DNA of 64,000 nucleotides from Chrysemys picta bellii (lineage: Eukaryota), in the NCBI RefSeq assembly GCF_011386835.1, contig NC_088802.1, forward strand, positions 22,072,001 through 22,136,000, in the 5' to 3' direction. The notes under the pieces are model-generated. The model did not search any database and was not told where the DNA came from. It worked only from the letters and a program-made list of their open reading frames with translations. The position numbers were made by a program, and so were the translations under genes. Position 1 is the first letter of the stretch. Each line of letters begins with the position of its first letter. Shown here in pieces: positions 553-64,000 of this stretch.

Positions 553-1146
553 AACTGGAAGGGACCTCAAGAGGTCACCTTGTCTAATCCCCTACACTCA
601 AGGCAGGTCTAAGTATTATCTAGACCATCCCTGACAGGTGTTTGGAGATTTTTAAGAGCAGATTGGACAACCTAAGAGGGAGATTCCACAACATCCCTAG
701 GCAATTTATTCCATTGCTTAACCACTCTGGCAGTTAGGAAGTTTTTCCTAATGTCCAACCTAAACCACCATTGCTGCAATTTAAGCCCATTGCATCTAGT
801 CCTTTCCTCAGATGTTAAGGAGAACAATTTTCTCCCTCCTCCTTGTAACAACCTTTTATGTATTTGAAAACTGATAACATGTCCCCTCTCAGTCTTCTCT
901 TCTCCAGACTAAACAAACCTATTTTTTTTTCAAATCTCCCCTCAGGTCATATTTTCTAGACCTTTAATCATTTTTGTTGCTCTTCTCTGAACTTTCTCTA
1001 ATTTGTCCACATCTTTCCTGAAATGTGTCGCCCCATATTGGAAACAGCCTAAATACACACTTTTTTTTTTTAGTGACGGTTGCTGAGATTGTGTGATAAG
1101 CCAAGTATCATTGCTCTTATTTTCAGGCACTACAGAGCATTGCTTC

Positions 1147-1522
1147 AGTGCTGACCCAGCCCAATGTTACTGGTAGCTTGTTACAGAGAGTGAACTTCAG
1201 GGATCTTGTCCCAAGGGGAACAAAACAGCATTTAAACCATTCTCAAGAAATCAGCTTTTAATCTTGGAGGCAGTTCAGGAAAGGCTTTTTGCTCCATTCC
1301 CACAGATAACCCTACACACCTTGATTGGTTTCACTGCTCCAGGTAAAGGGTCCAAAGATCACATCCATAAACCTATTGGATGTCTTGAGATGCTCTATTC
1401 TGGATGCAGATAGAATAGATAGTCTACCTACCTACTTATTGATTTGGCTAAGAAAACAGAGAAGATCACAGGTCAGAATGATCTCTCTATATTTATAATC
1501 CATGTTTAAAAGGCAGGTGAGT
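1147..1522 (+). promoter_or_regulatory. Putative OR promoter/non-coding first exon module, copy 1
   Basis: Non-repeat-like block homologous to 17495, 37717 and (inverted) 59500-59880; EBF-like TCCCAAGGGG at 1209-1218; donor CAG|GTGAGT at 1516/1517. Confidence 0.6.
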
Positions 1523-2101
1523 TGATTCATATTCTTATTCATTTTAATCTTTCAGTTTCAAAGAACCAGATTCTGCTCCACTTATCTAAGGGTGGGTCTC
1601 TCTGCCGAGTCCTATAGACTTCTGCCAGGATGCAACACTCTGCTCACACTGTCAGTTACAGCACAGGAGCTGTGGCTGGCAACCCAGCTACTATATGAAT
1701 CACCCAGCTTGCTCGCTCTCTCTCTCTCTCTCAACAGCACTGAGACAAATTAGATCAGCTTGTGCTTGTTAGCAGTAGTGTTTCTGTTTGGGAGTGATGA
1801 GGTTGGGGGCAGGGCATTCTCTGGAGATGGTGCTTAGCTTTGGAGTTCCCTTTGCACAGAATCTGCCTGTGACATTCTGGTTCTAGCACAAGATCTCTTT
1901 GCTTGGGCATTTGTCTGATGAGCTTATAATGGGGAAAAGATTTAGTTTCTCTCTGGCAGACATTAGGGTTTAAACATCAATTTGGCATTGGACAGAACAC
2001 TGGCTTCATTCCCATTTCCACTGAAAATCAATGTCAAAATAGCCATTCACTTCCAAGAGGGCAGGACAGATTGTCTTATGTATGAGCAGCCTGATATTCA
2101 G

Positions 2102-5100
2102 AGTCAAAAAGAAGAAGCTGCTGTCTAAAATGGATCCCCATGTGTCTCCTATAAATACTGACTGACTGGATTCTGTAGGTTTGGGTAGTCAGGAGTCTTG
2201 TTAAACCCTTGACAGAATTCCTGTATTTCAGGTGCTCAAATTCATTCATTTTCTTTGGTCTTTCCTTCACCTTTTCGCAGTGCCTAAGAGCGCTGTCTGC
2301 TGGAAGTCACTGACCATGATGTCTTGCAGTCCTAGCATGTTTTACCCCAAACCAGGACCGGCTCCAGGCACCAGCTGAGCAAGCTGGTGCTTGGGGTGGC
2401 AGCTTGTAAGAGGCGGCATTCCGCCCAAACCTAGGGCAGCATGGCTGCTTTTGTTGTTGTTGTTGTTCCGCTCCAGCCGCCCTGTAGGGGACAGCGACAT
2501 GGAGGACGGGAGTGCCCTGCAGCAAGCCCGGCAGGGCAGCCTGCGTCCTTCTCTCCCAGCCAATCGGAGCGGTGCGGAGCCCTCCCGGCATGGGGCACAA
2601 TAGGATGGGCCGCGTGGTAGCGCCCTGCTGAAGCCCTGGCCACCCCCTTCTCTCTCTCCCCCCACTACCTCATTCTCCCTCTCCCGCAGCTAGCCGGGGC
2701 ACATCTGCAGGGCAGAGAGTCCTTCAAGGCAGCATTCTTCATACTTCACCATCCTCTCTCCTTGTTTTTTTGATTGTCTGTTGGCACAGAAACATCAATT
2801 AACATGGGCTTGTTTGCTGTCTTTTTCTACAACTATGTCTGGCCTGTTTGACTGCACCATTTGGTCTGTGAAAATGGCCAGATTCCATAAATCTTACCAT
2901 CTTCATTCTCTAGAGCGCTTTCAGCTTTGTGTTATTAATAGCACAGTTTGTGGCAAGTATGGATTTGTATGGAGGCTCCAGTGCAGACACTTGGCAAATT
3001 CAGAGTGTCTGTTCATATATTCTCTCCCAGATAGACTCTAGCAGTTGCTCAATGCATGCTCCACCATCTCTTCCTTTTTAGAACACATTCTGCGGCTTGG
3101 GGAGCAATTGTCAGTGAATTTTACTTCTTACATAATTAAACCCCGTAAGGATTTTTCTTATCCGCTCACTATGAAGCTCTGCCTCTTTTTTTTTTCCAGG
3201 GATCCTTCTACAAGTCATGAGTTTGTCAATCTTCTATCACCAATAGGTTTGATCTCTCTCCACCACTATCCGTGCATTAATCTCTGTGTAAACCTTTCAA
3301 ATCTTTTTTGGCAGGTTGCTTTCTCCTTTCTTTCATGCTTTCTTGGGCTTGGATGCAGCTCAGTCTTGCTTGTTATCGTGACCGGATGATCTTTATTCTG
3401 GTTAACTCCTCATATATTTTGACATTATAGTGCTCATTATCAATTGCTTCCTCCACAGATAGCAGAGGTTTTCCTTTATCACATCATGGGATGTACATCC
3501 TGTCCATGACTTGATTGCTATCTAATACTCTATGCGTCACCGGCAGCTGTCGTCTTTGGATGTCATTTTTTTCTTCTCCTCTCAATTCCACTTGATCACT
3601 CCAGCAATATTCTGTACTACTGGCATCCCCCCCACATATTAATGGCTCAGAGCACATTCTTAGACTTCAGTTTTGTCCATAGAGTAGTTCTTGTACATCT
3701 GTAATATTCTTTCCTCACTTTTTCTTTCAATTTCTTATTTTGTAGCTCTGACAGTTCCCTGATTCCAAGATATTTGTAGGGGTCGTGCTGAGATATCATG
3801 GATAGTTCCATCATTAACTTGTATGTCATCAGATTGTACCAATCTGGCCATTTTTACAGATGCTGACACACAGTTAGCCAAGCCAACGCGTAGCTTTATA
3901 TCTTCACCAAACTTTTCCACACATCATCAATCTCTGTAGCTCTTTTTTGTGACTGTTCATGTAGTTTCAGATTGCTCATGTCTAACAAATTGTTAACTGG
4001 TTGTTGGTCTTTGATGATATGGTAAATTGTGATTATCTCAACAAGCATCCATGTCAGTGGCAGCATGGTTACCACAAACAGCACTGGTGCTAAGGAATCC
4101 CCTTGAAAGATTTGTCTTTTTAATTTGAATCTCATCAATTAGTCCCTCCCTGGGAGAGTCGAGTGCTCCAGTTAAACATAGATTGCTACAGAAAGGGAAT
4201 GATCCTTGGATAAACCTTGGACATTTTCAGTGTCTCAGTGATCCTTCATTTTGAGACACTGTTGGATGCTCTCTGGTGGAAAAAAAGTTAGCCATTGTGT
4301 GGGTAGACTTTCTTTGTTTTCAATCTTCTGTGATCCTCCTGTTTAGCCAGAAGTGGCCTTTTGTTCCTTTCATGTTTACTGTGCTGCCTTTTTGCTCAGG
4401 AACCAGCATTCCATTGTGAGCTAGCACTATCCAGATCGTCTTTCCTGGAATTATTGTAGAAGTTTCCTTATAGTTGGTAAACATGTGGTCAGTCTATAAT
4501 TCATAGGATCACTACAACTTTCTTTCTCTTTCTTTCTTTCATTGTCCCTGTCACCATCCATTTTTGAAATCCATTCGTCAAACATTTATTAATTTGTTCA
4601 AATAAACAATCATGGAGTGTTGTAAGGCATTTCAGCCAGAATCCAGGTATCCCATTTGGTCCGGGTGATTTCCAATTTTTCATTTATCTCAGTACCTCAT
4701 TTCTTTCTTTGGTGTTTCTGTGTATTCCTCTGTGCTGTGTTTTGTAAACTTTTTCTTTCATTTCTAATCCGGTTTGCTCTCTGCTTATGTTGTACAGTCT
4801 CAGACCAGATTTCCTTCCAGAAGCAGTGAAACTCTTCATCGTCATTTATTGGCTCTCTGATTTTGACTATTCTGTTTTTTATTTTTATTTTTTTCCATCA
4901 ATCAGATGAAAGACTCTCCTAGGGTCTCTGGTGAAGTGACTGTTCTCTCCATACTAATACCTTTGTGCTGAGATCTTTCAAGTCCATGACACTAAGCGAT
5001 CAGTTTCTCTTTACATTGTTCCTTCATAACTCTCACATCCTTTCATTCAGCTGATATTTCATCTCCAAGGATGCTGCTCTTTTCTCTTCAAATGATTTTT

Positions 5101-16710: not shown

Positions 16711-17494
16711 TATCTGCTGATGCTGATGTGCTACTGATTTATACAAAGCGAACAGATTCAAGAGGAGACACTGAGAAAGCCCTTTCTCAAACTAGCCAAG
16801 AGATTAAAGCACTTTCCTGAGAGATGGGAAACCAAACTTCAAATCTCTGCTCCACAATAGACAGAGGTGGGTCATGAATGAGTGTCTCCCACATGTCAGG
16901 TGATGAGTCCCCTAACCAATGTGTTAAAGGTACTGCAAGTCAATGAGGATCCCTGTGCCTCTTTGTGAATTTAGCCTTTTTTTCACCTTTGGCTCGGATG
17001 AAACTATTTGGTAAACTTGTTTCAAATTTACAAATGTATCAGGTCAATCAAAACAGCATTTTTTGGTGAATCAGCTGTTAGACTGTAAAATGGCAAGAAA
17101 GAATAGGAGATGCGACAAAGGAAAAGCTATATTGTATAGAGCTGGGCAAAATTTTTCAGACAATTTGCTCCTTTCTCATTCCTTAACCTGTGTATCCATC
17201 TCTTGGTGATGTTTAAGGATGGCTGGCCTATTCCCATGCTTTCACCTCCACTGCCCTCTTGTGGAATTAGACATCCAAATAGCAAATGATTTAGTCTCCC
17301 TAGACTCCTTTGAAGATGATAGCCATAATGTATAACTCCTTAGCCTACTTTAGAGAATCTGAGCCTAAATAAATTCCTTTTTAATTGACTGTTCCTTTGA
17401 TTGGAAACCTAAATCACTTGGGCTCTTTTCATAATCTAAGCCTCAGTACCCTCATTCTTATGAACCATACACCGTTATTTAAGGGCTGACCCAA

Positions 17495-17834
17495 CACAGT
17501 GTTCTCGGTAGCTTGTCACAGAGAGTGAACTTCAGGGATCTTGCTCCAGGGGGAACAAGACAGCATTTAAACAGCTCTCAAGAAATCAACTCTTATCCTT
17601 GGGAGTGGAACAAAGACCCGTTCCTTAGCAGATTCCAAGACTAACACTTGAAGGGTCTCACTGCTCCTGGTAAAACAAATATTTGAAGTCTTAAATGAGG
17701 TTTTCCAGAGGCAGAGACAGAGATTAGACAGACAAATCAATAAGTTAATAGATAGACTAAGAAAACAAAAAAAGAAAATCACAGGTCAGAATGATCTCAC
17801 CATCTTTATGATCTACATTAAAAAACAGGTGAGT
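17495..17834 (+). promoter_or_regulatory. Putative OR promoter/first exon module, copy 2 (diverged, two internal micro-inversions)
   Basis: Homologous to 1147-1522; variant EBF-like CTCCAGGGGG at 17544-17553; donor CAG|GTGAGT at 17828/17829. Confidence 0.55.
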
Positions 17835-18015
17835 TGATTCATGTTTTTATTCATTGTAATCTTTTATTTTCCTTTTAATTTCAAAGGACCAAGTTCTACC
17901 CCTACCCCTTATCTAGGGGTGGGTCTCTCTGCAGAGTCCCTTTGATTTCTGCCTGAATGCAGCAGTCGGCTCACACAGAGTCAGTAGCAGCATAAGGGTC
18001 ATGGCTGGCAATCCA

Positions 18016-18056
<41 letters not shown>

Positions 18057-18550
18057 TTCTCAAGGCAGCACTGAGAACACTGAGATCAGCTGGTGCAGGA
18101 TAACAGTAGTTTCTACTTTTGGAGTCTGTGTGTTGGGGGGTGAGTAGATTGGGGCAGGGCATTCTCTAGAGAAGACACTTAGCTTTTGGTTTCACTGTGC
18201 ACAGAGCCTTTGTTACCACTCAGGCAAGGTCCATCTCTTTTCTCGGGCATCTGTCTGATTAGCTGATAGTTGGGAAAAGATGTATTTTCTCTCTCTGGGA
18301 TACATATGGGATAAACATTGATTTGACATTGGACAGAACATTGGCTTCATTCCCATTTCCACTACAAATCAATGTTAATTCCATTAGGGCAGGAGAGATT
18401 CTCTTATGTAGGAAAAGCCTGATATTCAGATGTGCAGGATCCTGAGTTAAAAGTCCCATTGAGTTTAAGTGACTTAGGAACAAAACTCTCATTAACTGAC
18501 AATCAGATCCCTCCTTTTAAAATCATGTCAGCATTCCTAGAGAGTGTTCA

Positions 18551-26626: not shown

Positions 26627-27659
26627 TGTGAAAAGGTGCAACCTGAGACTGTGGGACTGCTGTGCCCCCTGAATTCACCATCCTGGGGTGTGTCTCAAAA
26701 TGCTCTGCTACTGACAAGCAGCAAACCACTCTCCAGGTTCTGTTATCATTCAGTCCAGCAGCATGTGAAGTCCCACATCCAGCTAGATTGCATGAATGTT
26801 CTCAGAGCCACTCATGAAATCCCAGAGAGAAAGGCACCAACCAGATCCTCCCAGCCTTCTACCTCAGGGATATACTGTCTTGCACTGCTCAAGATCACGT
26901 CTCAAACAATGCAAATGTATTAATTGATTTGCCACTTCTTTAAGGGGAGTGGACATGCACAGCCTTTGCAACCTGAGTAGATTTACCAAACACTTCAGAC
27001 AAATTCACTAGTAAGAATAAACATAAAAGTAAGTTTACTGACTGCAAAAGATAGATTTTAAGTGATTACAAGTAGTAAGCGTATAGATCAAAGTTAGTTT
27101 AAGAAATACAATAAAATCGCAGTCTGGGTTCTAATAACTGAACAAGATTTTAATCAAGCAATATCTCACCCTGATAGATGATATAAATAATTCTTTAGTA
27201 TGCAGGCTAGAAATCCTTTCAGCCTGGGACCCCCTCCCCAGTTCAGAGTCTTTGTTTTCTAGATGTTCCTTCAGGTGTTGAGTTGTGGTGGGGAGAGAGA
27301 ACAAGTCATGATGTCACTCTTCTTTTTTTATAGCTTCCTCCAGTGGGTGGAGTGTTACTGTTTCAAATACAGCCCCCAGCCGAGTTTATGGAAAAACGCA
27401 GTTTACAAAATAGAGTCAGGTTCACATGAGTGAGTCACATGCCCTTACATACTTTGATGACTCCACAACAGCAGCCATCCCCCATACTTCAGCTAGAAAG
27501 TTTACAGGTGGGGACAGGTTTCTTCTATGGTCCATTAATGGGCCATTAACTTGAATAGTCCGTTCACAATGTGTTGGCCAGACAAGATGTAAATACCTGG
27601 TGGGTGTCACCCCAGTAGGAAACATCTGAAATACCGGTACCTACTTAATATTCATAACT
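26627..27659. mobile_element. LTR-like element, truncated
   Basis: Starts TGTGA; collinear with 48669-49774; both end at ttaatattcat. Confidence 0.65.
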
Positions 27660-27973
27660 GCTCCTTCCTCCTCACCCTGATCTCCTACATTCCTATCATC
27701 TCCACTATCCTAAGGATACACTCTGCGGACGGCAGGTGTAAAGCCTTCTCCACCTGTTGCTCCCACCTTATTGTAGTTGGTTTGTTGTACCTGGCAGCTT
27801 TTTTCCAGTACACAAAACCCAGCTCAGTCTCCTCTGTGGCTCTGGATGAAATGTTCTCCGTCCAGTACAGCATCCTAACTCCCATGTTAAACCCCATTAT
27901 CTACAGCCTGAAAAATAAGGAGGTGAAAACAGCTCGAAGGAATATATTGGAGGAATTCAGCTCTCTCAAGTAG
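27660..27973 (+). pseudogene. 5'-truncated OR (TM5 to stop), paralog D
   Basis: In frame from 27662: SFLLTLISY...KAFSTCCSHL...PMLNPIIYSLKNKEVK; no TM1-TM4; abuts the LTR directly. Confidence 0.9.
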
Positions 27974-30554: not shown

Positions 30555-31484
30555 ATGGTAGACGCAGAACAGGGAAATCAAACCTCCCTCACAGAGTTCA
30601 TCCTCCTGGGATTTGGGACTGTCCCAAAACTGCAGATCCTTCTCTTTCTGCTGTTCCTTGTGATTTACATTGTGACCATGGCCGGGAACATCCTCATTGT
30701 TGTGCTAGTTGTGGCTGATCAGCACCTTCACACCCCCATGTACTTCTTCCTGGGGAACTTGTCCTGCTTGGAAACCTGCTACACCTCCACCGTCCTGCCC
30801 AGGATGCTGGCCAGTCTCCTGACTGGGGAAAAGACCATTTCTATTGGTGGCTGCATCACACAATGTTACTTTGTTGGCTTCTTTGCAGCCACCGAGTGTT
30901 ATCTCCTGGCAGCAATGTCTTATGATCGGTACCTAGCGATATGCAAACCACTGCATTATGCAACCCTTATGAATGGCAGTTTCTGCCTCCAGCTAGCAGC
31001 TGGGTCTTGGATAAGTGGGTTACTGGCTAGTTCCATAGTAACTGGTATGATGTTACAATTACCTTTCAGTGGCCCCAATGAAATTGATCATTTCTTCTGT
31101 GAATTTACACAAATAATAAATCTCTACCGCAATGACATCTACCAGGTGGAGCTTTTAATTACCATTCTGTCTGCTTTATTCACCCTGCCCCCATTTGCTT
31201 TAACTGGGACATCCTACCTGTGTATCATCTCCACCATCATGCGAATCCCTTCCACCACCGGGAGGCAAAAGGCATTTTCTACCTGCTCCTCTCACCTCAT
31301 TGTGGTGACAATTTTCTATGGGACCCTGATCATTGTGTATTTGCTACCAAACACCAACACACTCAGAGACCTCAACAAAGTGTTCTCTGTCTTCTACACA
31401 ATTCTGACTCCTATGGCCAATCCCTTCATATACAGCCTGAGAAACAAAGAGGTGAAAGAGGCCCTGAGAAAAAAATGCCAGTAA
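30555..31484 (+). CDS. Class II olfactory receptor, 309 aa, intact (second subfamily, OR6/10/11-like; paralog C)
   Basis: GNQT, LHTPMYFFLGNLS, MSYDRYLAIC, KAFSTCSSHL, PMANPFIYSL; ORF-track start 30513 lies in the polypyrimidine tract before acceptor tgtag at 30535, so ATG 30555 is preferred. Confidence 0.93.
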   Translation: MVDAEQGNQTSLTEFILLGFGTVPKLQILLFLLFLVIYIVTMAGNILIVVLVVADQHLHTPMYFFLGNLSCLETCYTSTVLPRMLASLLTGEKTISIGGCITQCYFVGFFAATECYLLAAMSYDRYLAICKPLHYATLMNGSFCLQLAAGSWISGLLASSIVTGMMLQLPFSGPNEIDHFFCEFTQIINLYRNDIYQVELLITILSALFTLPPFALTGTSYLCIISTIMRIPSTTGRQKAFSTCSSHLIVVTIFYGTLIIVYLLPNTNTLRDLNKVFSVFYTILTPMANPFIYSLRNKEVKEALRKKCQ

Positions 31485-37200: not shown

Positions 37201-37716
37201 ACGTCTAACCTCAGGAAATCTGCCTCTTAACCAGATGCTCTGCTTATTGCAAAATAACAACTCACAAGTTTAAACAGTAAACTTTAAGGGCCCAATCAAT
37301 CATGCTTCCTGCACATCTGGATAGATTCATGGGGCTTGATTCATGAAGAACTTAGGTGCTGCAACACTCAGCAATCCAACATCTAACTTTTAGGCACTTG
37401 GGAAAATCACTGCCCTTCACAAAGCCTGAGCTTGGCACCCCAGCTGCCTATACAAAGAAGGGTGGGAGAGAGAGATACCTAAGAAGGGGAGCCATAAAAG
37501 CCAGCACACTTGGCAGGGTGCCATCTAAACTAGCTAGTGGGAGATGCTAAGCCAAGAAGTGCTAAGCCCCACCTCTCCCAGGGAGTTGAGTGCCTAAGGC
37601 CTGATCTACACTGGGCGGGGGGACGGGGGAGGGGGGTCATCGATCTAAGTTATGCATCTTCAGCTACGTGAATAGTCTCATTGCTCTCATTTGTAGGCAA
37701 TACAAATAATTGCTTG

Positions 37717-38091
37717 AGTGCTGACCCAGCCCAGTGTTACTGGTAGCTTGTTACAGAGAGTGAACTTCAGGGATCTTGTCCCAAGGGGAATAAAACAGCA
37801 TTTAAACCATTCTCAAGAAATCAGCTTTAGTCTTGGAGGCAGTTCAGGAAAGGCTCTTTGTTCCACTCCCACAGATAACGCTACACACCTTGAATGGTTT
37901 CACTGCTCCAGGTAAAGGGTCCAAGGATCACATCCATAGACCTATTGGATGTCTTGAGATGCTCTATCCTGGATGCAGATAGACTAGATAGTCTACCTAC
38001 CTACTTATTGATTTGGCTAAGAAAACAGAGAAGATCACAGGTCAGAATGATCTCTCCATATTTATAATCCATGTTTAAAAGGCAGGTGAGT
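37717..38091 (+). promoter_or_regulatory. Putative OR promoter/first exon module, copy 3
   Basis: Very close to copy 1; EBF-like TCCCAAGGGG at 37779-37788; donor CAG|GTGAGT at 38085/38086. Confidence 0.6.
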
Positions 38092-38812
38092 TGATTCATA
38101 TTCTTATTAATTTTAATCTTTCAATTTCAAAGGACCAGATTCTGCTCCACTTATCTAGGGGTGGGTCTCTCTGCAGAGTCCCATTGACTTCTGTCTGGAT
38201 GCCACACACTGCTCACACAGATAGTTATAGCACAGAGGCCGTGGCTGGCAACCTAGCTACTATATGAATCATCTAGCTCTCGATCTTGCTCTCAACAACA
38301 CTGAGACAAATGAGATCAGTTGGTGCATGTCAGCAGCAGTGTGTGTGTGTTAGGGGGCAGTGAGGTTGGGGGCAGGGCATTCTCTGGAGATGGCACTTAT
38401 GCAGATTCTGTGCAAAGTGAACTCCAAAGCTGTGACATTCAGGTTCTAGTGCAGGATCTCTTTGTTTGAGCATTAGTCTGATGAGCTAATAATAGGGAAA
38501 AGATTTAGATGCTCTCTTGCAAACATTTGGGTTTAAATATTGATTTGGTGTTGGACAGGACACTGGGTTCATTTCTATTTCCAATAAACATCAAAGTCAA
38601 AATAGCCACTCGCTTCCAAGAGGGCAGGACAGATTTTCTTATGTATGAGCAGCCTGATATTCAGATTTGCAGGACACTGTGTCAAAAGCCCCATTTGATC
38701 AGACTTTCAAAGTAACTTTAGTGATTTTTAGGCACAAAAGTACCATTAATTTTCAGTCAGTCCCTTTTTCAAATTATGTCAGCATGCCTAGATAGTTTGT
38801 GGGGCACATTCC

Positions 38813-50407: not shown

Positions 50408-53400
50408 CCCCTTCACAGATTCGAAATATTTAATGTACTTAGCTGGCCACCATTGATGAGTATGGAAAAAATTCCTAGGGCAGGTAGATAGATAAATAGT
50501 TTTTTGTATGATACATATACATACATGTTGGTTTGTCAATGCTCACAAGAGACTACTCTAATACAGAAATTTGCACTGTGCAGAATCACAGTATTTCTGC
50601 TGCCTGGCAAACAAATGTGTCTGCAAGATTACTCTGTGTTTTTTTTTCTAGTGTGCAAAGGGAAGGAAATAAGAAGGGAAATTTATGCCCCGCTGAGAGC
50701 AAGAGATATTGGGCCATGTTGCAATCTTATTTACACCACTGGTAAACATGGAGTAACTTTACCGAAGCTGATGATGTTACTCCAGATTCGCACAAGGTTA
50801 ACTGGAGGTTAGAATCTGGTCTGTTATTCCTAATGGTGAGTTTTTATTGCCTGTTAATTTCCAAATCAGTTTTCTAGTGTTGTTTGACATAACACTTCAC
50901 AACCCTGCTTCCTTCTGTACACTGAATATTAAATAAAAGAGCCATTATGTCTCAGCATTTTCACTTTCTAGCCTCAGTGCCAGAATAGCCTGAATATGTT
51001 CCACTGTAATCTGATTGTTCATTGTAAGTGAGAGCACAAAATGGTGAACACAACTGATACAAACTTCATACTAAGGTCAAACAAGGCTAACATCTATAGA
51101 GATGGCTGAATAATTTAGAGCAAGTGATGCATACAGTAATTTTTTCCAGTTTTTTCCATGCAGAACCACACAATGTTCTCAAATGCACTCATTCAAAATT
51201 ACTCTAAAAATGTAATAAAAAACCCAGGTTGATTGTGAGCCACCTGTGGTCAAATATTTATTGAAATTCTTTTTCATTGTGGGGACTTTTGTCTAAAGTG
51301 CTTCAGTGGCTGAGGAGCCTAATCTTGGAATAATGAGATCCAAGGGCAAGAAGCTCAAATTCAAATTAAAAATGTGGCACATCTTTTTAACAGTGATGGT
51401 GATTAACTATCAGAACCAACTCAGACTAGGTGCATTCCTGGAGTATAGGATTTAGTCAAACGTTATTAGACTAAGTCCAGGGGCAACTGGGTGAAATTTA
51501 ATGGCCTTGGTTATACAGGAGGTCAGAATAGATGATCAAATGATTCTTTCTGGGCTTAAAAATCGATGAATCTAGGTGCCATAGAAAATTAATGGGAGTT
51601 AAACTTCCAAGTCATTTGGGCACTTTTGACGTATCTCTGTCTCTATTCTAATCTATCTAAGCCTGTGTCACTGGCCACATGGCAGAGAGAAGAGAAAAGC
51701 GTCTTACCCCTGCAGCTACCTCTAGGCAAATGCCAGCAAATCCAGGGTCAGCCAGCCTGGGGAAAACTATGCCTCATGGTTGAGCCAATCAGGAGCTGTT
51801 CTGTAGCAACACCATAGAATATATTTCCCTGAACCAATCACAACGTCCCAAGGGGCGTGGCTTTTGACCGGTGGTTTGTTTAAAAAAAATACAGCTCTTT
51901 AAACAAAGGAATGAAAAGACAAACACTGTACATAACACAAGTTGTTGTAGTAATATACCAGCCTTTAGCTTGCTTTTTAATTCTTTGCCGAAAGAAAAAC
52001 TGCTGTAAAAAAAGCTTTAAATTTACAGACTTTATAAAGCACACACACAGGCTAACTTAACTGTTTTACATTATGCTAGTTTTTCTTTTAACACTTTATA
52101 CCAGAGATTAGAAGGCTTTCCCCCCACCCCTGACTCTTTTTCTTCTTAATGTTTTTTTTTAATCAAAACACAGTTAAACCAAGTAAAGTTTTAACAAACT
52201 TTTAAAACACCAATCAAAAGAAACATATCTGTAGATTTCTTTATTTACCGGTTATCTTTTTCAGTGAAAGATTTTTTAATCACAGGATTACAATTAAATA
52301 AAGTGATTAGAAGCTACACCATCACAAATTTTACAAATAATTTAATCATGTTTTTACATTTTAAAAAGATGCAGTTTAAATTGTATTACAGAGATGATAG
52401 TTATTTAGTTATGGAAGTTGAATAAAGAAAGATTTTAGTAATTTTTTTGTTGAAATGCCTTGCATAGTATGAAAACCCACCTGCACAAATAGCTTACAGG
52501 AATGTAAATTGTGAAGACATAAGTTCCAGGAGAATAGCAATATTATACAAAACCCACATGTAAAGAAGGGCTGTACAATAATAAAATAAAACAGAAAAAG
52601 ACATGTTATAGCTTTCTAAATGTTTAATGGCACTCTTTCAAAAATAGTATTAGCTTGCTTTTTAGAGTTTTGCCTAAACAAATTGACCAGAATACAAAAG
52701 AAAACCCAATGAAAACTGCTCTGCCTTAAATTGTTAAGAAATCCAGGGTGCAGTTAAAAAAAACAAAACACATAATTGATTGGTTTTATAATGGTTTATA
52801 TATATATAAAAAACAAAAGCCACAGCTCGAGTTAAACTCAAGTTGCTCCTCGAGCTAACGTTGCAGATAGGGGTATGTCTGCACCGCAATCACTTGATGT
52901 TACTGCAGCTCATGTAGACACACCCAAGTCAGCTTTAAACTAGCTAGCTCAGGTACCGGAGCAATGGACCTGCAGCAGCCTGTGCTTCAGCCTGGGCTGT
53001 AGCAGCCCACCCGGAACCCTGTGAATTTACTTACATGGCTAATCTCAGCTGAAGCGTGCGCTGCCGCAGCTTTAACGCTCCAGTACTTGGTAGCTAGAGT
53101 AAAGCTTGCTGGGGACTGTCTACACCAGCTGAAATCACACCCCATGATTGCAGGGTAAACTGACCCAAAGACAAGCCCATAAATTCAACCCCAAATGTGC
53201 AAACAGGTGTGAAAAATGATGAGAATGGCTTAAAAATCATGAGATATTAATCTACACATTTACTGGCATTTTTTTCTCAGGGCCTCTTTCACCTCTTTGT
53301 TTCTCAGGCTGTATATGAAGGGATTGGCCATAGGAGTCAGAATTGTGTAGAAGACAGAGAACACTTTGTTGAGGTCTCTGAGTGTGTTGGTGTTTGGTAG

Positions 53401-56255
53401 CAAATACACAATGATCAGGGTCCCATAGAAAATTGTCACTACAATGAGGTGAGAGGAGCAGGTAGAAAATGCTTTTTGCCTCCCGGTGGTGGACCGGATT
53501 CGCAGGATAGTGGAGATGATACACAGGTAGGATGTCCCAGTTAAAGCAAACGGGGGCAGGGTGAATAAAGCAGCCACAATGATGATTACAAGCTCCACCT
53601 GGTAGATGTCGTTGCGGTAGAGATTTATTATTTGTGTAAATTCACAGAAGAAATGATCAATTTCATTGGGGCCGCAGAAAGGTAATTGTAACATCATACC
53701 CGTTACTACGGAACTAGCCAGTAACCCACTTATCCAAGACCCAGCTGCTAGCTGGAGGCAGAAACTGCCATTCATAAGGGTTGCATAATGCAGTGGTTTG
53801 CATATCGCTAGGTACCGATCATAAGACATTGCTGCCAGGAGATAACACTCGGTGGCTGCAAAGAAGCCAAAAAAGTAACATTGTGTGATGCAGCCACCAA
53901 TAGAAATAGTTTTGTCCCCAGTCAGGAAACTGGCCAGCATCCTGGGCAGGATAGTGGAGGTGTAGCAGGTTTCCAGCCATGACAAGTTCCCCAGAAAGAA
54001 GTACATGGGGGTGTGAAGGTGCTGATCAGCCACAACTAGCACAACAGTGAGGATGTTCCCGGCCATGGTCACCATGTAAATCACAAAGAACAACATAAAG
54101 AGAAGAATCTGCAGTTTGGGAATAGTCCCAAAACCCAGGAGGATGAACTCTGTGAGGGAGGTTTGATTTCCCTGTTCTGTGTCTGCCATGGACCAAACTA
54201 TACAAGAGAACAAGAATGGCATTAGTTAAATGTCAAGATCACATTATCAATTTAAATGCATTAATGTTCAAATGCTCCCTCTCCTTCAGGTCCCCCAAAC
54301 AAATACTGGGCTGAGCACACAGTCTGGGGGCTTGGAGTCATATAATGGAGGCTTATGACATCTGAGAGTGAATGAGAAAAACTGACACACAAACATGCTG
54401 CTAAGGCAAGCTCAGATTTGTGTAAAAACCCTATTTTTTCTGATTGGCAAAAGAATAAGCCTTGCTCCCTTTGTTCTGCTCCAAGAGCTGACACTAGTGG
54501 TATGCAGTGGGAAAACCAGATCACCAGGAGGAGTCTGGCAAATGAAGGACTCCCTGAATTCTCACAGCCTCGTTTGGGCTGGTAAAACACCCTACAATTT
54601 TGCTGGCTGTGAATCGGCTTGGTTTGTCCCTGACAGAAACCAACTCACCATGCGTGAGGTTGTGCCACTCCAAACCATCACCTCCTAAGCCTTTTTAGGT
54701 GGTCATCATTTGATTTCATTGTGCTGTACCATGTAGATAAGTTTTTATGCTGCTTTGTGATCATTGCATATTAACTTTTGAATTCCTCTGTTCAATTTTC
54801 AGAATGTCCCTAAGCAGTTTGAATCAACATATCCCTTGGCAATCGTCTCAGTATATATTACATAAGCTCTGAATACAGAGTTGAGGCAGTGACCTCAGGA
54901 TTAGGGTCTAGAGTGTGAGGGATTTAGAGACCTGAAGTTGGGGATTTGGGTGAGGGCATCTCAAAGAGTTTTCCTCTGCCTAGAGCACCACATAGGGGAT
55001 TCTGTGGGCCTGATTTTGGTGGAAATCAGGCTACTGGAAGCATCTCACCTGCCCATCATCATTGCAGTCATCAGCCATAGAGTCATTTATAGAGGAAATT
55101 CCTAGTCTCTTTATGTGGACAAGCACTCACTGAGGATAATTAAAAGCTACTACTGGAGATAATCTGGATAAGAGATAATACTGCAATATATAAACTGGGA
55201 TTCTATTTGAAGCCCACACCTTGGCTAGAGCATTCAGTTGGATGCCGATTGCAAAACTAAATGTCACTGAAAATGCCACATCCCAGTAGAAAGTTTTGAT
55301 TTTGATGAATCAACATTTCCATCAGAAAATTTTCAAATACATCAAAATTATAAAATAAATTAAAAAGAAACAAAACACTATACAATTATGAAAGAAATAG
55401 AAATAAAATATAAAAAAGTAAAATTAAAATAAACACTATAAAGTAAAAATAAAACTATAGAACATAAAATTAAAATATAAAATGCAATAAAATAAAAAAT
55501 ATATATAAACAAATATTTTCAAAAATGGAAAATTTTAACAAAATAAAATTAAAAAATAACATTTGAAAGTAAATAAAATAGAAAGAGTAAAAAAATAAAA
55601 AGTTATAAGTGCAGTGAAATATGCTGGGAGAGAGTCGAAGATCAGTTAATCCCTGATTATGTGAGCAAGAACGACCTTGGCAAACATCTGAACGAGAGAA
55701 TGCTTGGTGCCACCTCAGAGGCCTGGCCAACCCCATCCAAGATCCCATCTCCAGCTGTGGCCATCCCTGATGCTTCAGAGGAAGGAGACCTAAAACCACC
55801 CCTAAAACAAAAACCCTCCGAGAATACATTCCCAGAGGGGGATCCCCTTCCTGACCTGAAACCCTGAAGCATGAGCTTTAGGAAGCTAAGACATAAACCA
55901 GAAGTGAGGCCCAGGGCTGCTAAGCCGTGCCCTCCAACATCTCAAGAAATGCAATCGTACAGTTGCACTCATAAATTTGTCCAGCTCTCTCTTAAAACTA
56001 ATTAAGTTGTGTGTCCCTACAGCTCCTGTTGGAAGGTTGTTCCAGAATCTCACGCCTCTGTTGGTGAGAAACCTTCTTCTAATTTCCAGCCTGAATTTGT
56101 TCATGGCCAGTTATATACACATTTGTTTTTGTCCTACAAGGATAGGGAATTAGGAAGAGGAGCTCCACCATAACTTTTATCCCAGTAGTTATGGTGCTCA
56201 TCTCGGATATGGGAGACCCCTACTTCAAGTGTCTGATGAGGAGAAATGACTGAAA
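50408..56255 (-). repeat. Inverted segmental duplication, arm 2 (block X')
   Basis: Reverse complement of 28279-35300, lacking the CR1 and Penelope-like insertions of arm 1. Confidence 0.9.
53260..54189 (-). CDS. Class II olfactory receptor, 309 aa, intact (paralog F, inverted copy of C)
   Basis: 20 aa differences from C by manual count; candidate acceptor TAG at 54198-54200 (minus). Confidence 0.93.
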   Translation of the reverse strand: MADTEQGNQTSLTEFILLGFGTIPKLQILLFMLFFVIYMVTMAGNILTVVLVVADQHLHTPMYFFLGNLSWLETCYTSTILPRMLASFLTGDKTISIGGCITQCYFFGFFAATECYLLAAMSYDRYLAICKPLHYATLMNGSFCLQLAAGSWISGLLASSVVTGMMLQLPFCGPNEIDHFFCEFTQIINLYRNDIYQVELVIIIVAALFTLPPFALTGTSYLCIISTILRIRSTTGRQKAFSTCSSHLIVVTIFYGTLIIVYLLPNTNTLRDLNKVFSVFYTILTPMANPFIYSLRNKEVKEALRKKCQ

Positions 56256-56769
56256 TTGCTAGGATTTTTCAAGAAAAAGAAATGAGTGTGCCTGGAAAAC
56301 ATTCTCTAGTCACAGTGACATACTTTCAAAAAGTGCCCGATAGAAAATTAGTGAGACTTCTGTTCCTAAGTCACTTAAACTCCTTTGAAAATCTGACTCA
56401 ATGGGACTTTAGCTCATTGTTCTGCACATCTGAAAGTCAGGCTCCACATATACACGAGAGTCTATCCTGCCCTCATGAAAGTGAGTGGCTATTTTGACAT
56501 CAATTTTTAATAGAAATGGGAATGAATCCAATGTTCTCTCCAATGTCCAATCTATGTTTGTCCCCATATGACCCTATAGAGAAACTGAACCTTTCCTCCA
56601 TTATCAGCCCATGAGACAAATATTTAAGCAAAGAGATTAAAATATTCATAAATGATCTAAGAAAACGAGTACACAACACTGGCTCTAGTACTATTTACCT
56701 GTCTCCACTCAGAAAGTTTCCTTTGCACAGAATCTGCCTATGTTCACAGCTAGGTTCTAGTACAAGTTT

Positions 56770-57802
56770 AAACAGTGAAGTGGCAAAATTTACACACTAT
56801 ACAAAACTACTCAAGGTAGTTAAGTCCAAAGCAGACTATGAAGAGTTACAAAAGGGATCTCAAAAAATGGAGTGGCTGTGCAAGAAAATGGCAGATGAAA
56901 TTCAATGCTGATAAATGCAAAGTAAAGCACATTGGAAAACATAATCCCAGCTATTCACACAAGATGATGAGGTCTAAATTAGCTGTTACCACTCAAGAAA
57001 GATCCTGGAGTCACCATGGGTAGTTCTGTGAGAAGATCTGCTCAATGTGCAGCAGCAGTCAAGAAAACTAACATAATGTTAGGCACCATTAGGAAAGGGA
57101 CAGATAAGAAGACAGACAATATCATAATGACACTGTATAAATTCATGGTACACCTACACCATGAATACTGAGTGAAGTTCTGGTCACCCCATCTCAAAAA
57201 TGATATATCCAAATTGGAAAAAGTACAGAGAAGGGCAACAAAAATGATTATGGGTATGGAACAGCTTCCATATGAGGAGAGATTTAAAAGACTGGGACTG
57301 TTTGGCTTGGAAAAGAAAGGAGTAAGATGGGATATGAAATCATGAATGGTGCGGAGAAAGTAAATAAGATAGTGTTATTTACATCTTCACAAAACACATG
57401 AACCAGGAGTCACCTGCCAAAATTAATAGGCAGCAGGTTTAATACATACAAAAGGAAGAATTTCTTCACACAATGCACAGTCAAGTGGTAGAACTTGTTG
57501 CCAGAGGATGTTGTGAAGGCCAAAAGTATAACTGAGACAAAAAGAAATAGATAGCCATTGATGGACCTATCCTCCATGAAGTTATTAGCCAAGATGCTCT
57601 GGGACTCATCCCCACTCTTGGGGTGTCCATAAACCTCTGGCGGCTAGAAGCTGGGACTGGACAACAGAGGATGGATCACTCAACAAATTGCTCTTTTCTG
57701 TTCACTCCTTCTAAAACATCTGACACCGGCCACTGTTGGAAGACAGGATACTGGCTATATGGACCATTGGTCTGACCCAGTATGGCCATACTTACATTCT
57801 TA
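56770..57802 (+). mobile_element. Old CR1 3' fragment
   Basis: [25 protein letters not shown] motifs with stops and frameshifts; ...cttacattctta tail. Confidence 0.85.
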
Positions 57803-58017
57803 TTAAAACTAAGTGTCTTCTCCAGAGAATGCCCTACCCCGAACCTCCCCATAAAACACACACACTCTCTCCAAAAAAAGAAACTACAGCTAACATGCAC
57901 CAAATGAACTCCATTTTCTCAGTGCTGCCTTCAGAAGTAGAGAGAGAGAGATGAGTGATTTCAGTAGTAGCTGGGTTCCCAATCACAACGCCTTTCTTGC
58001 AATTCATTCAGTGTGAG

Positions 58018-59162
58018 TAGGGTGACCAGACGTCCCGATTTTATCGGGCCTGTCCCGATATTTGCTTGTTTGTCCCGTGTCACGACTGATGTGCGGTCGG
58101 GACACTGGACAAACAAGCAATTTTGCCCTCCTGGAAGGGCTCTTGGCCTCCCCCACCCGACTCCGCCCCCTCCATCCCCCATTGGCTCCCTCCCCAAATC
58201 CCCGCCCTGGCCCCGCCTCTTCCCCATGCATGTGGCATTCCACCTCCCTCCCAGGCTTGTTGCTGTAATGGCGGGGCAAGCCTGGAGGGCGGGGGTGGTG
58301 GCCGGCTTCCAGTTCCTGGAGCTGGTGAGTAGGGGCACTGGGCGGGCAAGGGAGGCTGGCAAGGGGGCTGCTCCCCCAGGAGGTACAGGGGGGACTCCGG
58401 ACACCAGCAGTGGTGGGGGAGAGCGGCTCGGGGCCGCACGAGTGGCCATGTAAAGTTTATCGTATTGGACGGCCCCCGGCCGGCTGCCCGCCCCGCGCCA
58501 GCATGTCGCACCCGCCGCCACAGGCCAGGTAAGGAGCCGAGTCACCCCCTCCCCCCTTGTCCTGGCTCCTCAGCTGAGCCCCCCGTCACCCTCCTGGGGG
58601 AGCAGCCCCCTTGCCCGCCCGGTGCCCATACTCACTAGCCTCAGGAACTGGAAGCTGGCCACCACCCCCTCCCTCCAGGTTTGCGCCAGCATTCCATCTG
58701 CAAGCCTTGGAGGGAGGAGGAATGCCGCTCAGCTGAGGAGCCGAAGGGAGGGAGGGAGAGACTCGGTTCCTTACCTGGCCTGTGGCGGCCTGCGGAATAT
58801 ACTGGTGTGGGGCGGGGACGCTACCCTCCTACAGGGCAGGGTGAGGAGCCAGCCGGGGTCCCCCCCCAGCTGATAAACTTTACGTGCCCACTTGCGCAGC
58901 CCTGAGCCGCTCTCCCCCGCCGCTGCCGGGGTCCGGAGCCCCGCACCTCTCACTCCAGCGGCTCCTTCCCCGCGGGGCGGCGGGACGTGCCACATGTGCC
59001 TGGGGCCCGGGGGGGGGGGGGAGAGGGGCAGCGGCCATGGTGCGGCCGGCACCTGCAAAACAGCTTTTTTTTTGCTCCGCCCACCCCATGCGTCCCAATA
59101 TCCCCCGCCCCTCCCCCCCCCCCCGCGTCCCGATATTTCCTGTCAGTGATCTGGTCACCCTA
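58018..59162. mobile_element. Non-autonomous hAT (Blackjack-type TIR), 1145 bp, GC-rich
   Basis: Perfect 13-bp TIR tagggtgaccaga/tctggtcacccta; perfect 8-bp TSD agtgtgag (58010-58017, 59163-59170). Confidence 0.9.
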
Positions 59163-59172
59163 AGTGTGAGCA

Positions 59173-59355
59173 TGCAGTGGAGTTGTAGCTGTATCTGTCC
59201 CAAGATATTTGAGAGACAAGGGAGGGGTGAGATAATACCTTTTATTGGACCAACTTCAGTTGGTGAGAGAGGAGAACTCGGTGTGGCTCAAAAACTTCTC
59301 TCTCACCAACTGAATTTGGTCCAATAAAAGATATTACCTCACCTACCTTGCCTCT
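59173..59355. mobile_element. Penelope-like hairpin insertion
   Basis: Inverted arms ~59210-59267 and ~59295-59352 (ttttattggaccaac / tggtccaataaaag); 9-bp TSD gtgtgagca. Confidence 0.65.
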
Positions 59356-60781
59356 GTGTGAGCAGACTGCTGCATCCAGGCGGAAGTCAATGTGACCCTG
59401 TTGAGAGACCCACCCCTAGATAAGGGGGGGGGGGGGGGGGAAGAATCTGATCATTTGTAAAGGAAAGGGTAAAATAAGATTAAAAAGGAATAAAAATATG
59501 AATCAACTCACCTGCCTTTTAAATGTGGACCATAAAAATGGTGAGATCATTCTGACCTGTGGTTTTCTCTTTCTGTTGTCTTAGAGAGATTAGACAGACA
59601 AATCAGTAAGTAGGTAGATAAACAGACTTTCTGCCTCTGCAATACATCATGTCAGGATATCAACTCATCTTTGCTCCACTCCCAGGGATAACCTTACCCT
59701 ACCTTGTCAGCTTTAACTGTTTGGAGTAAAGAGCCTTTCCTCATCTGACTCCAAGACTAAGAACGGATTTTGGAGAGTTGTTTAAATGCTGTCTTGTTCC
59801 CATGGGAGAAGATCCCTGCAGATCACTCTCTGAAACAAGCTATCTGTAACACAGAGCTGGGTCAGTCCTTAAGCAGCAATTTACCATGCATAAGAATGAG
59901 AGTACTGAAGCTTGGATTGCCAAAGGAGCCTAATGGATTTAGGTATCCAATCTCAGTGACAGGCTTGGATTTTAAAAGTGCCCTAGGAGCTAGACCCCCA
60001 AACAGCAAACCATTTCATCTCCCATACGCTCCATTGACAATGCTAGCCATAATGTGAATGGAGCAAATAGACTGCATGAGATGGTGGGGAAAAAGTAGGA
60101 TGGGGGGACTAAGCAGTATTGCTTGACCCTGTGCTATTTGAAAATTTGACACCTATTCACCAAATATTTTCATGCATAGGAAAAGAAAGTCTAATTTGAC
60201 AATCCAGCATATGGAAGCATCCCCCTATACCTTTAACCTATTGGTTAGAGTACTTGGATGTGGGGGAAACTCATTCACTTCTCACCTCTGCCTGCTGTGG
60301 AGAAGAGATTTGAAATTAGGGCTCCCATCTCTCAGGAAAGTGCTCTAATCTCTTGGCTATGAGGTATTTTAGGGTAGGGCTTTCTCAGGCTCTCCTAATG
60401 AAGCTGTTCACATTATATAAGTCAGCAGCACATCGGCAACAGCAGATACTAGATACATCACTAGAATGCAGGTATGGAGGCATGTAGAATAGATTTCCAT
60501 CTTAGATTCACTCTTGCAAGTTTTCTTGCTTCCACAAGAGTTAGTATGGGAGGATTTAGGTTTCTTAAATTCCTCAGAATTGCAGCTTCCAATCTTATTC
60601 ATGATCACCCTTATGCTCTTCTTCCTTTGACCTCAGATTTATAAACCTTCAGTAAAAAAGTGTACTTTCTTCTGCACATTGGACATGACCCCACCATTGA
60701 ATCCATCTTCTTCTCAACTGATACAAGACTGCAACTAGCTGGGATCATCTAAGTATGTCCTTGCTTGTGACAAAATCAAAC

Positions 60782-62559: not shown

Positions 62560-64000
62560 CATAAAATGCTCTAAGTGCATGAAGCCGGCGGACCGCGTCC
62601 ACAGTACCGAGGCTAGAGTCGACTTCCGGAGCGTAGCACTGTGGGTAACTATCCCACAGTTCCCACAGTCTCCGCCGCCCATTGGAATTCGGGGTTGAGA
62701 TCCCAATGCCTGATGATGCAAAACAGTGTAGCGGGGGGGTTCTGGGTACATGCCGTCAGGCCCCTCCCCCTCCATCAGAGCAACGGCAGACAATCGATTC
62801 GCACCTTTTTACCTGGGTTACCTGTACAGACAACATACCACCACAAGCATGGAGCCCGTTCAGATCAGCTCAGCTCACCATCACCATATATCATCTGGGT
62901 GCCGGCAGACGTGGTACCACATTGCTACACAGCAGCAGCTAATTGCCTTTTGGCAGTAGACGGTGCAGTATGACTGGTAGTCGTCATCGGCTATCTGGGT
63001 GCTGGCAGACGTGGGGCTGCATTGCTATACAGCAGCAGCCCATGGCCTTTTGGCAGTAGATGGTGTACTAAGATTGATATCCATCATCGTCGTATTCCAG
63101 TTCACTCAGAGGCACCTGGGCAGACATGCTTTGCCTCCTGGAGACTCAGTCCTGCCGGCTGTACTATTGAACTGTCTTGACGATGATGGCTAGCAATCGT
63201 AGTACAGTATCTTCTACCAAGCACCCAGAAGATGCCGAGGGCTATCAGTCATGCTGCACCATCTGCTGCCAGCTTAATATGTAAAAAATAGATGTATTCA
63301 TTTGCTTCCCCCTCCCTCCGTGAAATCAACGGCCTGCTAAACCCAGGGTTTTGAGTTCAATCTTTGGAGGGGCCATTCTGTGTGACAGTTGTTTGTGTTT
63401 CTCCCTGATGCACAGCCACCTTTGTTGATTTTAATTCCCTGTACCTATATGCCATGTCGTCAGTCGCCCCTCCCTCCCTCCGTCAGTTTCGTGCCTTTTT
63501 TCAAACCAGACGCCATAGCACTGGGATCATGGAGCCCGCTCAGATCACCGCGGCAATTATGAGCACTATGAACACCACGCGCATTGTCCTGGAGTATATG
63601 CAGAGCCAGGACATGCCAAAGCAAAACCAGGACCAGCTGATGAGGCGATTGCAGCGCAGCGACGAGAGTGATGAGAAAATTGACATGAACATAGCCCTCT
63701 CACAAGGTACGGGCCCCAGCAATGTGGAAATCATGGTGTTAGTGGGGCAGGTTCATGCCGTGGAACACCGATTCTGGGCCCGGGAAACAAGCACAGACTG
63801 GTGGGACCGCATCATGTTGCAGGTCTGGGACGAATCCCAGTGACTGCGAAACTTTTGCATGCGTAAGGGCACTTTCATGGAACTTTGTGACTTGCTTTCC
63901 ACTACTCTGAAGCGCCAGAATATCAGGATGAGAGCAGCCTTCACAGTTGAGAAGCGAGTGGCGATAGCCCTGTGGAAGCTTGCAACGCCAGACAGCTACC
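62560..64000 (+). mobile_element. PIF/Harbinger transposon with transposase pseudogene (runs off the window)
   Basis: ATG 63529; WWDRIMLQVWDESQ, TGA at 63841-63843, then in frame LRNFCMRKGTFMELC...VEKRVAIALWKLATPDSY. Confidence 0.9.

What the first reader, a model, noticed from the sequence alone, without database searches (positions are those of the whole stretch)
54189..59880. Orphan promoter capture: a CDS-less OR promoter now points at an OR of the other subfamily
On the minus strand, copy 4 keeps the best EBF palindrome in the set (TCCCATGGGA, 59798-59807) and an intact donor (59512/59511). Its own coding exon is deleted: the intron joins the 3' flank at ~56255. The next candidate acceptor I identified downstream is that of OR F (54198), giving a 5.3-kb intron similar in size to the native ones. 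The missing gene's CDS end survives only beside the other arm (27660), so the two duplicates retained complementary halves. Inference: F may be transcribed from a captured promoter while its twin C is not, a route to new OR expression domains.
Basis: partly seen in the sequence, partly recalled or inferred. Interest (0 to 1): 0.7.

Follow-up and report, generated by a model that had tools for sequence, protein, structure and literature searches.

The report
Orphaned turtle smell-receptor promoter module
In a painted-turtle smell-receptor cluster, one receptor gene lost its coding part but kept a promoter-like front end that now points at a neighbouring, intact receptor gene; whether the neighbour uses it could not be tested, and shared or alternative front ends are already known for these genes.

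Summary
The sequence observation holds at the stated coordinates. On the minus strand, 59349-59952 is the fourth copy of a module that lies 3.4-5.1 kb upstream of three OR5V1/5A1-like genes (A, B, E). It has the window's only perfect TCCCNNGGGA site, a TATA-like box, an Inr-like site and a perfect CAG|GTGAGT donor. About 6 kb (rest of the intron, the coding exon and about 0.3 kb of 3' flank) is missing at 56256-56300. The module now sits 5.3 kb upstream of OR F, an OR10A7-like gene.

The tail of the missing gene's counterpart survives next to F's inverted twin C. The C/F duplication predates the Emys/Chrysemys split, and both genes are intact (dN/dS 0.30).

The functional claim, that F is transcribed from the captured promoter, stays untested.

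Two results bear on it:
- **Against a need for capture:** C has no module yet is conserved, so the shared upstream block probably carries a native promoter.
- **For feasibility:** orientation and distance match the native genes, the motifs are intact and few poly(A) hexamers intervene, but 16 AG sites score at least as well as F's acceptor.

Verdict: real relic, plausible but unproven alternative promoter, known kind.

The parts
59759..59952 (-). Upstream part of module copy 4 (putative promoter). Holds the conserved core block with the EBF/O-E palindrome at 59798-59807 and the TATA-like TTTAAA at 59781-59786.
   Evidence: Four-copy alignment. Core blocks are 80% invariant against 53% elsewhere, Fisher p = 6e-9. 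Perfect O/E match.
59512..59758 (-). Predicted non-coding exon 1 of the lost gene D (about 247 nt). It runs from an Inr-like TTAGTCT (A at 59758, 28 nt after the TATA-like box) to the donor CAG|GTGAGT (exon end 59512).
   Evidence: Sequence, alignment, donor scan. The TSS is inferred from motif spacing only.
59349..59511 (-). Retained 5' part of D's native intron. Includes a conserved block and a copy-4-specific poly-C run that creates a strong cryptic AG at 59415.
57952..59348 (-). Inserted repeat DNA of about 1.4 kb: a hairpin element at 59226-59343 and a GC-rich element with long internal palindromes. Absent from copies 1-3.
   Evidence: Self-BLAST gap relative to copy 2, inverted repeats, GC 0.57.
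57805..57951 (-). Retained piece of the native intron, homologous to 18042-18186.
56638..57804 (-). Second inserted interspersed repeat of about 1.2 kb. Related copies lie at 23148-23385 and 45191-45383.
56277..56637 (-). Last retained piece of D's native intron, homologous to 38456-38818, 18233-18548 and 1893-2102.
56256..56300 (-). Deletion junction. About 45 nt with no clear homolog lie between intron homology and 3'-flank homology. About 6 kb in gene-E coordinates (about 38818 to about 44835) is missing.
54198..56255 (-). Block X: the former 3' flank of D plus F's upstream region, shared with C (28276-30535). Holds a CR1 3' fragment, an AT-rich tract, a candidate native donor (ATG|GTGAGT, exon end 54649), a TATA-like CATAAAAA at 54742-54749 and a strong conserved AG (exon start 54361).
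   Evidence: The proximal promoter is a candidate only.
53260..54189 (-). OR F coding exon: 309 codons, intact, OR10A7-like. Acceptor tag| at 54198.
   Evidence: (PF13853/PF00001 precomputed).
27650..27973 (+). psiD: in-frame 3' end (107 codons plus stop) of an A/B/E-type OR, beside twin C.
30555..31484 (+). OR C, the inverted twin of F (93.5% protein identity). Acceptor tag| gives exon start 30536. No module within its arm.
1096..2102 (+). Module copy 1, upstream of OR A (6522-7454).
17399..18430 (+). Module copy 2, upstream of OR B (21223-22155).
37674..38665 (+). Module copy 3, upstream of OR E (43259-44191).

Best explanation
The region is the stranded front end of a dead olfactory receptor gene.

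**History.**
- An emydid-old inverted duplication copied a unit made of an OR5V1/5A1-like gene D and an OR10A7-like gene downstream of it.
- In the arm on the minus strand, a deletion of about 6 kb removed most of D's intron, its coding exon and about 0.3 kb of 3' flank.
- D's promoter-like module and non-coding exon 1 were left 5.3 kb upstream of OR F, in F's orientation.
- Two repeat insertions (about 2.6 kb) later filled the gap.

**Most likely function (inferred).** F is transcribed mainly from a native proximal promoter in the upstream block it shares with its twin C. The orphan module is then either a slowly decaying relic or, at most, a secondary distal promoter whose exon 1 can splice to F's coding exon.

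The anatomy and the history are shown by the sequence. Which promoter is used is inference.
For: **Anatomy:**

**The module looks like an OR promoter plus exon 1.**
- There are four copies. Three lie 3.4-5.1 kb upstream of intact ORs whose ATGs are preceded by good acceptors.
- Core blocks are far more conserved than the rest.
- Four of the window's six perfect donors are in the modules.
- An O/E site plus a TATA-like box just upstream of the inferred start fits the mouse OR promoter architecture (PMC3247239). Most mouse ORs have 5' non-coding exons (PMC4154679).

**A native promoter is likely in the shared block.**
- C has no module in its arm, yet C and F are both intact, with dS 0.097, dN 0.029 and omega 0.30.
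- Each has its own orthologue clade in Emys, Malaclemys and Trachemys.
- F's proximal 600 nt are 89-99% identical to C's. They contain a TATA-like box and a donor kept in both arms.

**F's acceptor is weaker than the native ones.** It scores 8.1 against 10.1-10.4, and 16 competing AGs lie in the repeat-filled interval.
Against: - No transcript evidence of any kind was obtained, so the proximal promoter is only a candidate.
- Copy 4 keeps every core motif and has not changed faster than copy 2: 59 against 64 lineage-specific changes, p = 0.72.
- Only one AATAAA and two ATTAAA lie between the donor and F, fewer than in some native introns. Read-through into F is therefore easy if the module fires.
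- The region about 600 nt upstream of C/F carries a 52-nt inversion and a repeat insertion in one arm. That weakens the case for a conserved proximal promoter there.
Confidence: 0.5

Rival explanations
1. Promoter capture. The orphan module is an active OR promoter in olfactory neurons. Its exon 1 splices across the 5.3-kb interval to F's coding exon, giving F a D-family choice probability or expression zone that C lacks.
For: - Orientation and distance match the native genes.
- The donor is perfect. The O/E site became a perfect palindrome through a 1-nt loss. The TATA-like and Inr-like motifs are kept.
- Few poly(A) hexamers intervene.
- F's exon is the first downstream exon with an acceptor followed by a long ORF and poly(A) signals.
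- Precedents exist. OR coding exons are spliced to exons of upstream genes and share 5' UTR exons (PMC3566163). Some OR genes have two distant promoters (PMC4721658).
Against: - There are no RNA data.
- C does without the module and is at least as conserved.
- Conservation of copy 4 has no power. At most about 3% lineage divergence has accrued since the duplication, which predicts at most about 5 neutral changes in the 150 core positions, against 8 observed on the whole branch.
- The 6-codon uORF kept in copies 1-3 has lost its stop in copy 4. In a module-F transcript it would become a 51-codon uORF overlapping F's ATG.
- Sixteen AG sites score at least as high as F's acceptor, and a 1.2-kb GC-rich palindrome lies in the path.
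Confidence: 0.3
2. Ancestral sharing rather than capture. In the ancestral unit, the module's exon 1 already spliced alternatively to D or to the OR10A7-like gene 2.5 kb downstream of D. The deletion merely made the module exclusive to F. C would be served in the same way by B's module or by donors in the psiD remnant.
For: - Both arms show an OR10A7-like gene within about 2.6 kb of the stop of an A/B/E-type gene.
- Older Gnomon models in Chrysemys (XP_023968592.1) and Trachemys (XP_034646050.1) join the psiD tail to C's acceptor.
- Long-distance splicing across OR genes is reported in human (PMC3566163).
Against: - The Gnomon models may be purely computational.
- A, B and E are not followed by an OR10A7-like gene.
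- No transcript data were obtained.
Confidence: 0.08
3. The module is not a promoter at all. It is only a conserved part of the tandem duplication unit, for example an intronic or enhancer-like segment, and the real starts of A, B and E lie elsewhere.
For: - No start site has been mapped.
- No conserved homeodomain (TAAT) site lies next to the O/E site.
- O/E-like sites are no more frequent in the window than chance predicts.
Against: Conservation is block-wise, centred on an O/E-TATA-Inr arrangement and on a perfect donor in all four copies. Matching acceptors lie 25-30 nt before the ATGs of A, B and E.
Confidence: 0.07

Closest known systems
Mammalian OR gene architecture: O/E (EBF) and TATA-bearing promoter, non-coding 5' exon(s), single coding exon (PMC3247239, PMC4154679)
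   Same: An O/E site and a TATA-like box lie within about 50 nt of the inferred start. A non-coding exon is spliced over 3-5 kb to an acceptor just before the ATG.
   Different: No start site is mapped here. No conserved homeodomain site was found beside the O/E site. The host is a turtle, for which no OR promoter data were found.
Chimeric OR transcripts and shared 5' UTR exons, e.g. TRIM58-OR2W3/OR2T8 and OR5V1/OR12D3 (PMC3566163)
   Same: An OR coding exon lies downstream of, and in the same orientation as, another gene's promoter and donor. It could therefore be expressed from that promoter.
   Different: Those cases are shown by RNA-seq and RT-PCR, and the upstream gene is intact. Here the upstream gene's coding exon is deleted, so the promoter has no product of its own, and no transcript is shown.
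OR genes with two alternative, distant promoters, e.g. Olfr466, Olfr266/267/370 (PMC4721658)
   Same: If both the module and a proximal promoter work, F would have a proximal and a distal promoter a few kb apart.
   Different: In the mouse cases the origin of the second promoter is unknown. Here its origin, a dead neighbour of another subfamily, can be read from the sequence.

Membership tests
Olfactory receptor, class II 7TM (OR F and OR C) | Intact ORF of about 310 codons with the 7tm_4 / rhodopsin-family domain and OR motifs | tested here: met
   ORFs. Precomputed PF13853 and PF00001 on the cluster that holds F. Nearest named relatives are OR10A7-like proteins of turtles.
OR promoter (O/E + homeodomain + optional TATA near the TSS) | O/E (EBF) site within about 200 bp upstream of the TSS | tested here: inconclusive
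   A perfect site lies at 59798-59807, about 45 nt before an Inr-like site, and one-mismatch sites sit at the same place in copies 1-3. The TSS itself is only inferred.
OR promoter (O/E + homeodomain + optional TATA near the TSS) | Homeodomain (TAAT-core) site near the O/E site | tested here: not met
   No TAAT core is conserved across the four copies in the core block.
OR promoter (O/E + homeodomain + optional TATA near the TSS) | Mapped transcription start used in olfactory sensory neurons | not testable with these tools
Spliced OR gene with a non-coding exon 1 | Consensus donor after exon 1 and acceptor shortly before the ATG | tested here: met
   CAG|GTGAGT is present in all four copies. 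Acceptors score 10.1-10.4 for A, B and E, 11.4 for C and 8.1 for F. Sequence level only.
Chimeric / shared-5'-exon OR transcript (promoter capture) | Reads or cDNA joining the foreign exon 1 to the OR coding exon | not testable with these tools
Chimeric / shared-5'-exon OR transcript (promoter capture) | Same-strand promoter and donor upstream, with no intervening terminal exon | tested here: met
   D's coding exon is deleted. Only 1 AATAAA and 2 ATTAAA lie in 5.3 kb.

The most novel reading that the evidence does not exclude
The orphan module is a working OR promoter that drives a substantial share of F transcripts. A simple deletion would then have moved a receptor of one subfamily under the choice and zonal control of another subfamily's promoter, while its twin C kept the native control. 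That would be a natural experiment separating promoter identity from receptor identity in OR gene choice, conserved across emydid turtles.
Probability: 0.15. Interest if true: 0.6.

Novelty: new member of a known kind. Interest (0 to 1): 0.33.

Why it matters
If F really uses the stranded promoter, the C/F pair would be a natural swap experiment. Two nearly identical receptors would differ in having, or lacking, a promoter of another OR subfamily. That could show how much of an OR's choice frequency and expression zone is set by its promoter. It would also show one cheap evolutionary route to new expression domains: deleting a neighbour's coding exon.

If F does not use it, this is an ordinary relic of gene death in a fast-turning-over gene cluster.

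Tried and rejected
- **RNA evidence.** The look-up of sequencing runs listed no RNA holder of 53200-59950. The F protein search used only window:53263-53979, and the F cluster representative P0001 was not reused.
- **Orthologous DNA.** Two metagenome scans with conserved module patterns found nothing.
- **Gene order from accession numbers.** Emys and Malaclemys A/B/E-type proteins were listed to see whether an intact D sits next to F. Their numbers are not near those of C and F, so the numbering says nothing here.
- **Search for an intact D orthologue.** The psiD tail was searched as region 1-116 of P0122. The best full-length hits reach only 84% identity in emydids and non-emydids alike, and 83% for a Chrysemys paralogue, so no orthologue can be told from paralogues.
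- **Rate test on copy 4 against copy 2.** No excess change was found, but the test lacks the power to detect decay since the deletion.
- **Perfect donor at 25618.** It was checked as a possible fifth module and lies in an unrelated coding-like repeat.
- **Joined model.** The exon 1 + F model was examined only in a local script, for uORFs.
- **Earlier scan notes.** They had nothing near this place.
Full report
**What the window is.** It holds five intact olfactory receptor (OR) genes.
- A (6522-7454), B (21223-22155) and E (43259-44191) lie on the plus strand. They are 310-codon genes whose nearest named relatives are OR5V1/5A1/5G9-like turtle proteins.
- C (30555-31484, plus strand) and F (53260-54189, minus strand) are 309-codon OR10A7-like genes.
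- The cluster that holds F lies on a 57.9-Mb contig shared with proteins named Chrysemys picta bellii. Earlier scan notes also call this genome painted turtle.

**Check of the observation.** A self-comparison and a four-way alignment show a module of about 0.6-1 kb in four copies.
- Copies 1-3 lie on the plus strand. Their donors are 5.0, 3.4 and 5.1 kb upstream of acceptors that sit 25-30 nt before the ATGs of A, B and E.
- Copy 4 lies on the minus strand at 59952-59349.
- One perfect TCCCNNGGGA per 64 kb is what chance gives, and one-mismatch sites occur at the chance rate. The site therefore means something only through its place in the module.
- That place is a block conserved in all four copies. 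Two core blocks, O/E-TATA and donor, are 80% invariant against 53% elsewhere (p = 6e-9).
- Four of the six perfect 9-mer donors in the window belong to the modules.
- A TATA-like TTTAAA (59781-59786) is followed 28 nt later by an Inr-like TTAGTCT (A at 59758), with equivalents in the other copies. I infer an exon 1 of about 247 nt.
- This layout matches what is described for mouse OR promoters and gene models (PMC3247239, PMC4154679). No conserved homeodomain site was seen.

**The deletion.**
- Downstream of its donor, copy 4 keeps only about 0.67 kb of native intron, in three pieces: 59511-59349, 57951-57805 and 56637-56277.
- Two repeat insertions of about 1.4 and 1.2 kb separate these pieces.
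- Intron homology stops near 56300.
- From 56255 on, the sequence matches the 3' flank of B and E and the flank of a gene fragment beside C.
- In gene-E coordinates, about 6 kb is missing: the rest of the intron, the whole coding exon and about 0.3 kb of flank.
- The last 107 codons of such a gene survive in frame at 27650-27970, just upstream of C.
- The arms are 28276-32120 on the plus strand and 56255-52659 on the minus strand.
- Well-aligned non-coding windows of the arms differ by 1-12%.

**History.**
- C and F are 93.5% identical in protein, with dS 0.097, dN 0.029 and omega 0.30.
- The 90% cluster around the Emys orthologue holds two genes each from Emys, Trachemys and Malaclemys.
- In a maximum-likelihood tree these fall into a C clade (support 97/92; Emys P0002 stays unresolved at its base) and an F clade (91/96).
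- The inverted duplication is therefore older than the split between Emys and the Chrysemys/Trachemys/Malaclemys group, and F has been kept intact since.
- The Trachemys model of the C-side fragment extends at least 10 codons further than the Chrysemys fragment. The two D copies look eroded piecemeal rather than neatly partitioned.

**Can the module reach F?**
- The interval is 5,314 nt, similar to the native introns. It holds one AATAAA and two ATTAAA on the transcribed strand, no more than the native introns have.
- By a crude, hand-made weight matrix, F's acceptor scores 8.1, against 10.1-10.4 for A, B and E.
- Sixteen AG sites in the interval score at least as high. They include one created by a poly-C run 97 nt after the donor (59415) and a conserved one at 54361 inside the shared block.
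- Either 54361 or 54197 would still yield an F-coding mRNA.
- A 6-codon uORF kept in copies 1-3 has lost its stop in copy 4. In a module-F transcript it would run 51 codons across F's ATG. B and E also carry overlapping uORFs, so this is only a mild point (local script only).

**Does F need the module?** Probably not.
- C has no module in its arm. The nearest is B's, about 12.7 kb upstream, with B's coding exon in between. Yet C is conserved at least as well as F.
- The simplest reading is a native promoter in the shared block.
- A candidate lies about 450-650 nt upstream of the acceptor. It has a TATA-like CATAAAAA (54742-54749), a donor ATG|GTGAGT (exon end 54649; GTGTGT in C) and a one-mismatch O/E-like site (54832-54841).
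- That O/E-like site lies in a 52-nt stretch that is inverted between the arms, next to a repeat insertion in C. The candidate is therefore weak.
- Older Gnomon models in two species join the psiD tail to C's acceptor. That may be purely computational.

**Is copy 4 still under constraint?**
- Copy 4 has no more lineage-specific changes than copy 2 (59 against 64, p = 0.72). It is as similar to the other copies in the core blocks (86-88%) as copy 2 is.
- The deletion cannot be older than the duplication, and about 3% lineage divergence predicts at most about five neutral changes in 150 core positions.
- The test therefore cannot separate 'still constrained' from 'recently orphaned'.

**What could not be done.**
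- No RNA run holds the region.
- Two metagenome scans found nothing.

**Comparison with what is known.**
- OR coding exons spliced to exons of upstream genes, shared 5' UTR exons (PMC3566163) and OR genes with two distant promoters (PMC4721658) are documented in mammals.
- What is particular here is that the origin of a possible second promoter can be read from the sequence: a dead neighbour of another subfamily, with a twin gene as an internal control.

**Verdict.**
- The relic is real and well resolved.
- I put the chance that F transcripts start at it at about 30%, and the chance that it is a major promoter at about 15%.
- It is a new member of a known kind, of moderate interest until RNA or cross-species data exist.

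Noticed in passing
27650-27973 and 30536; proteins P0130, P0122: Older NCBI models XP_023968592.1 (Chrysemys, 475 aa) and XP_034646050.1 (Trachemys, 431 aa) fuse the psiD tail to C, through a donor AA|GTAGAG at psiD's stop codon. Residues 1-95 of the Chrysemys model are not in this window at high identity. Residues 1-24 match 60602-60531 at 87.5% and 16569-16628 at 80%. Residues 18-95 match A, B and E at only 67-71%. The older assembly may differ here, or those exons may lie outside the window.
   Followed up: partly
29861-29912 vs 54790-54840; 29227-29313 vs 55249-55336: Two short stretches (about 52 and 88 nt) are inverted between the C and F arms. The first abuts a palindromic repeat insertion of about 190 nt present only in the C arm (about 29668-29855).
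   Followed up: partly
3' flanks of A, B, E and psiD: An AATAAA lies 1377, 1346, 1354 and 1312 nt after the stop codons of A, B, E and psiD. This may be a conserved poly(A) site giving a 3' UTR of about 1.35 kb in this subfamily. B/E homology ends just after it (23518/45562).
   Followed up: no
module copies, around the conserved AGAATGA (copy 4 near 59550): A 6-codon upstream ORF with a conserved start context is kept in copies 1-3 (stops TAA, TGA, TAA). It has lost its stop (TGG) in the orphan copy.
   Followed up: partly
53260-54189: Chrysemys F has a longer terminal branch (0.023) than C (0.0065) and than the F orthologues of Trachemys, Malaclemys and Emys (0.007-0.010).
   Followed up: no
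16097-17057 vs 62200-60113: About 1 kb upstream of module copy 2 is homologous (about 75%) to the region upstream of copy 4. The duplication unit of these two therefore extends well beyond the module. Copy 4's side carries an extra 1.1 kb, including a repeat also present at 26649-27035 and 48691-49122.
   Followed up: no
11280-12443 (-), 10780-11202 (-), 33259-33999 (+): ORFs that look like CR1-like reverse transcriptase and its C-terminal part (not checked against a family library). The start of the C/F shared block (about 28400-28900 and 56130-55650) looks like a CR1 3' fragment.
   Followed up: no
25640-26200 and 63454-63843: Coding-like stretches that look like a repeat-borne gene. The first holds one of the two perfect donor 9-mers outside the modules. 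Not identified.
   Followed up: no
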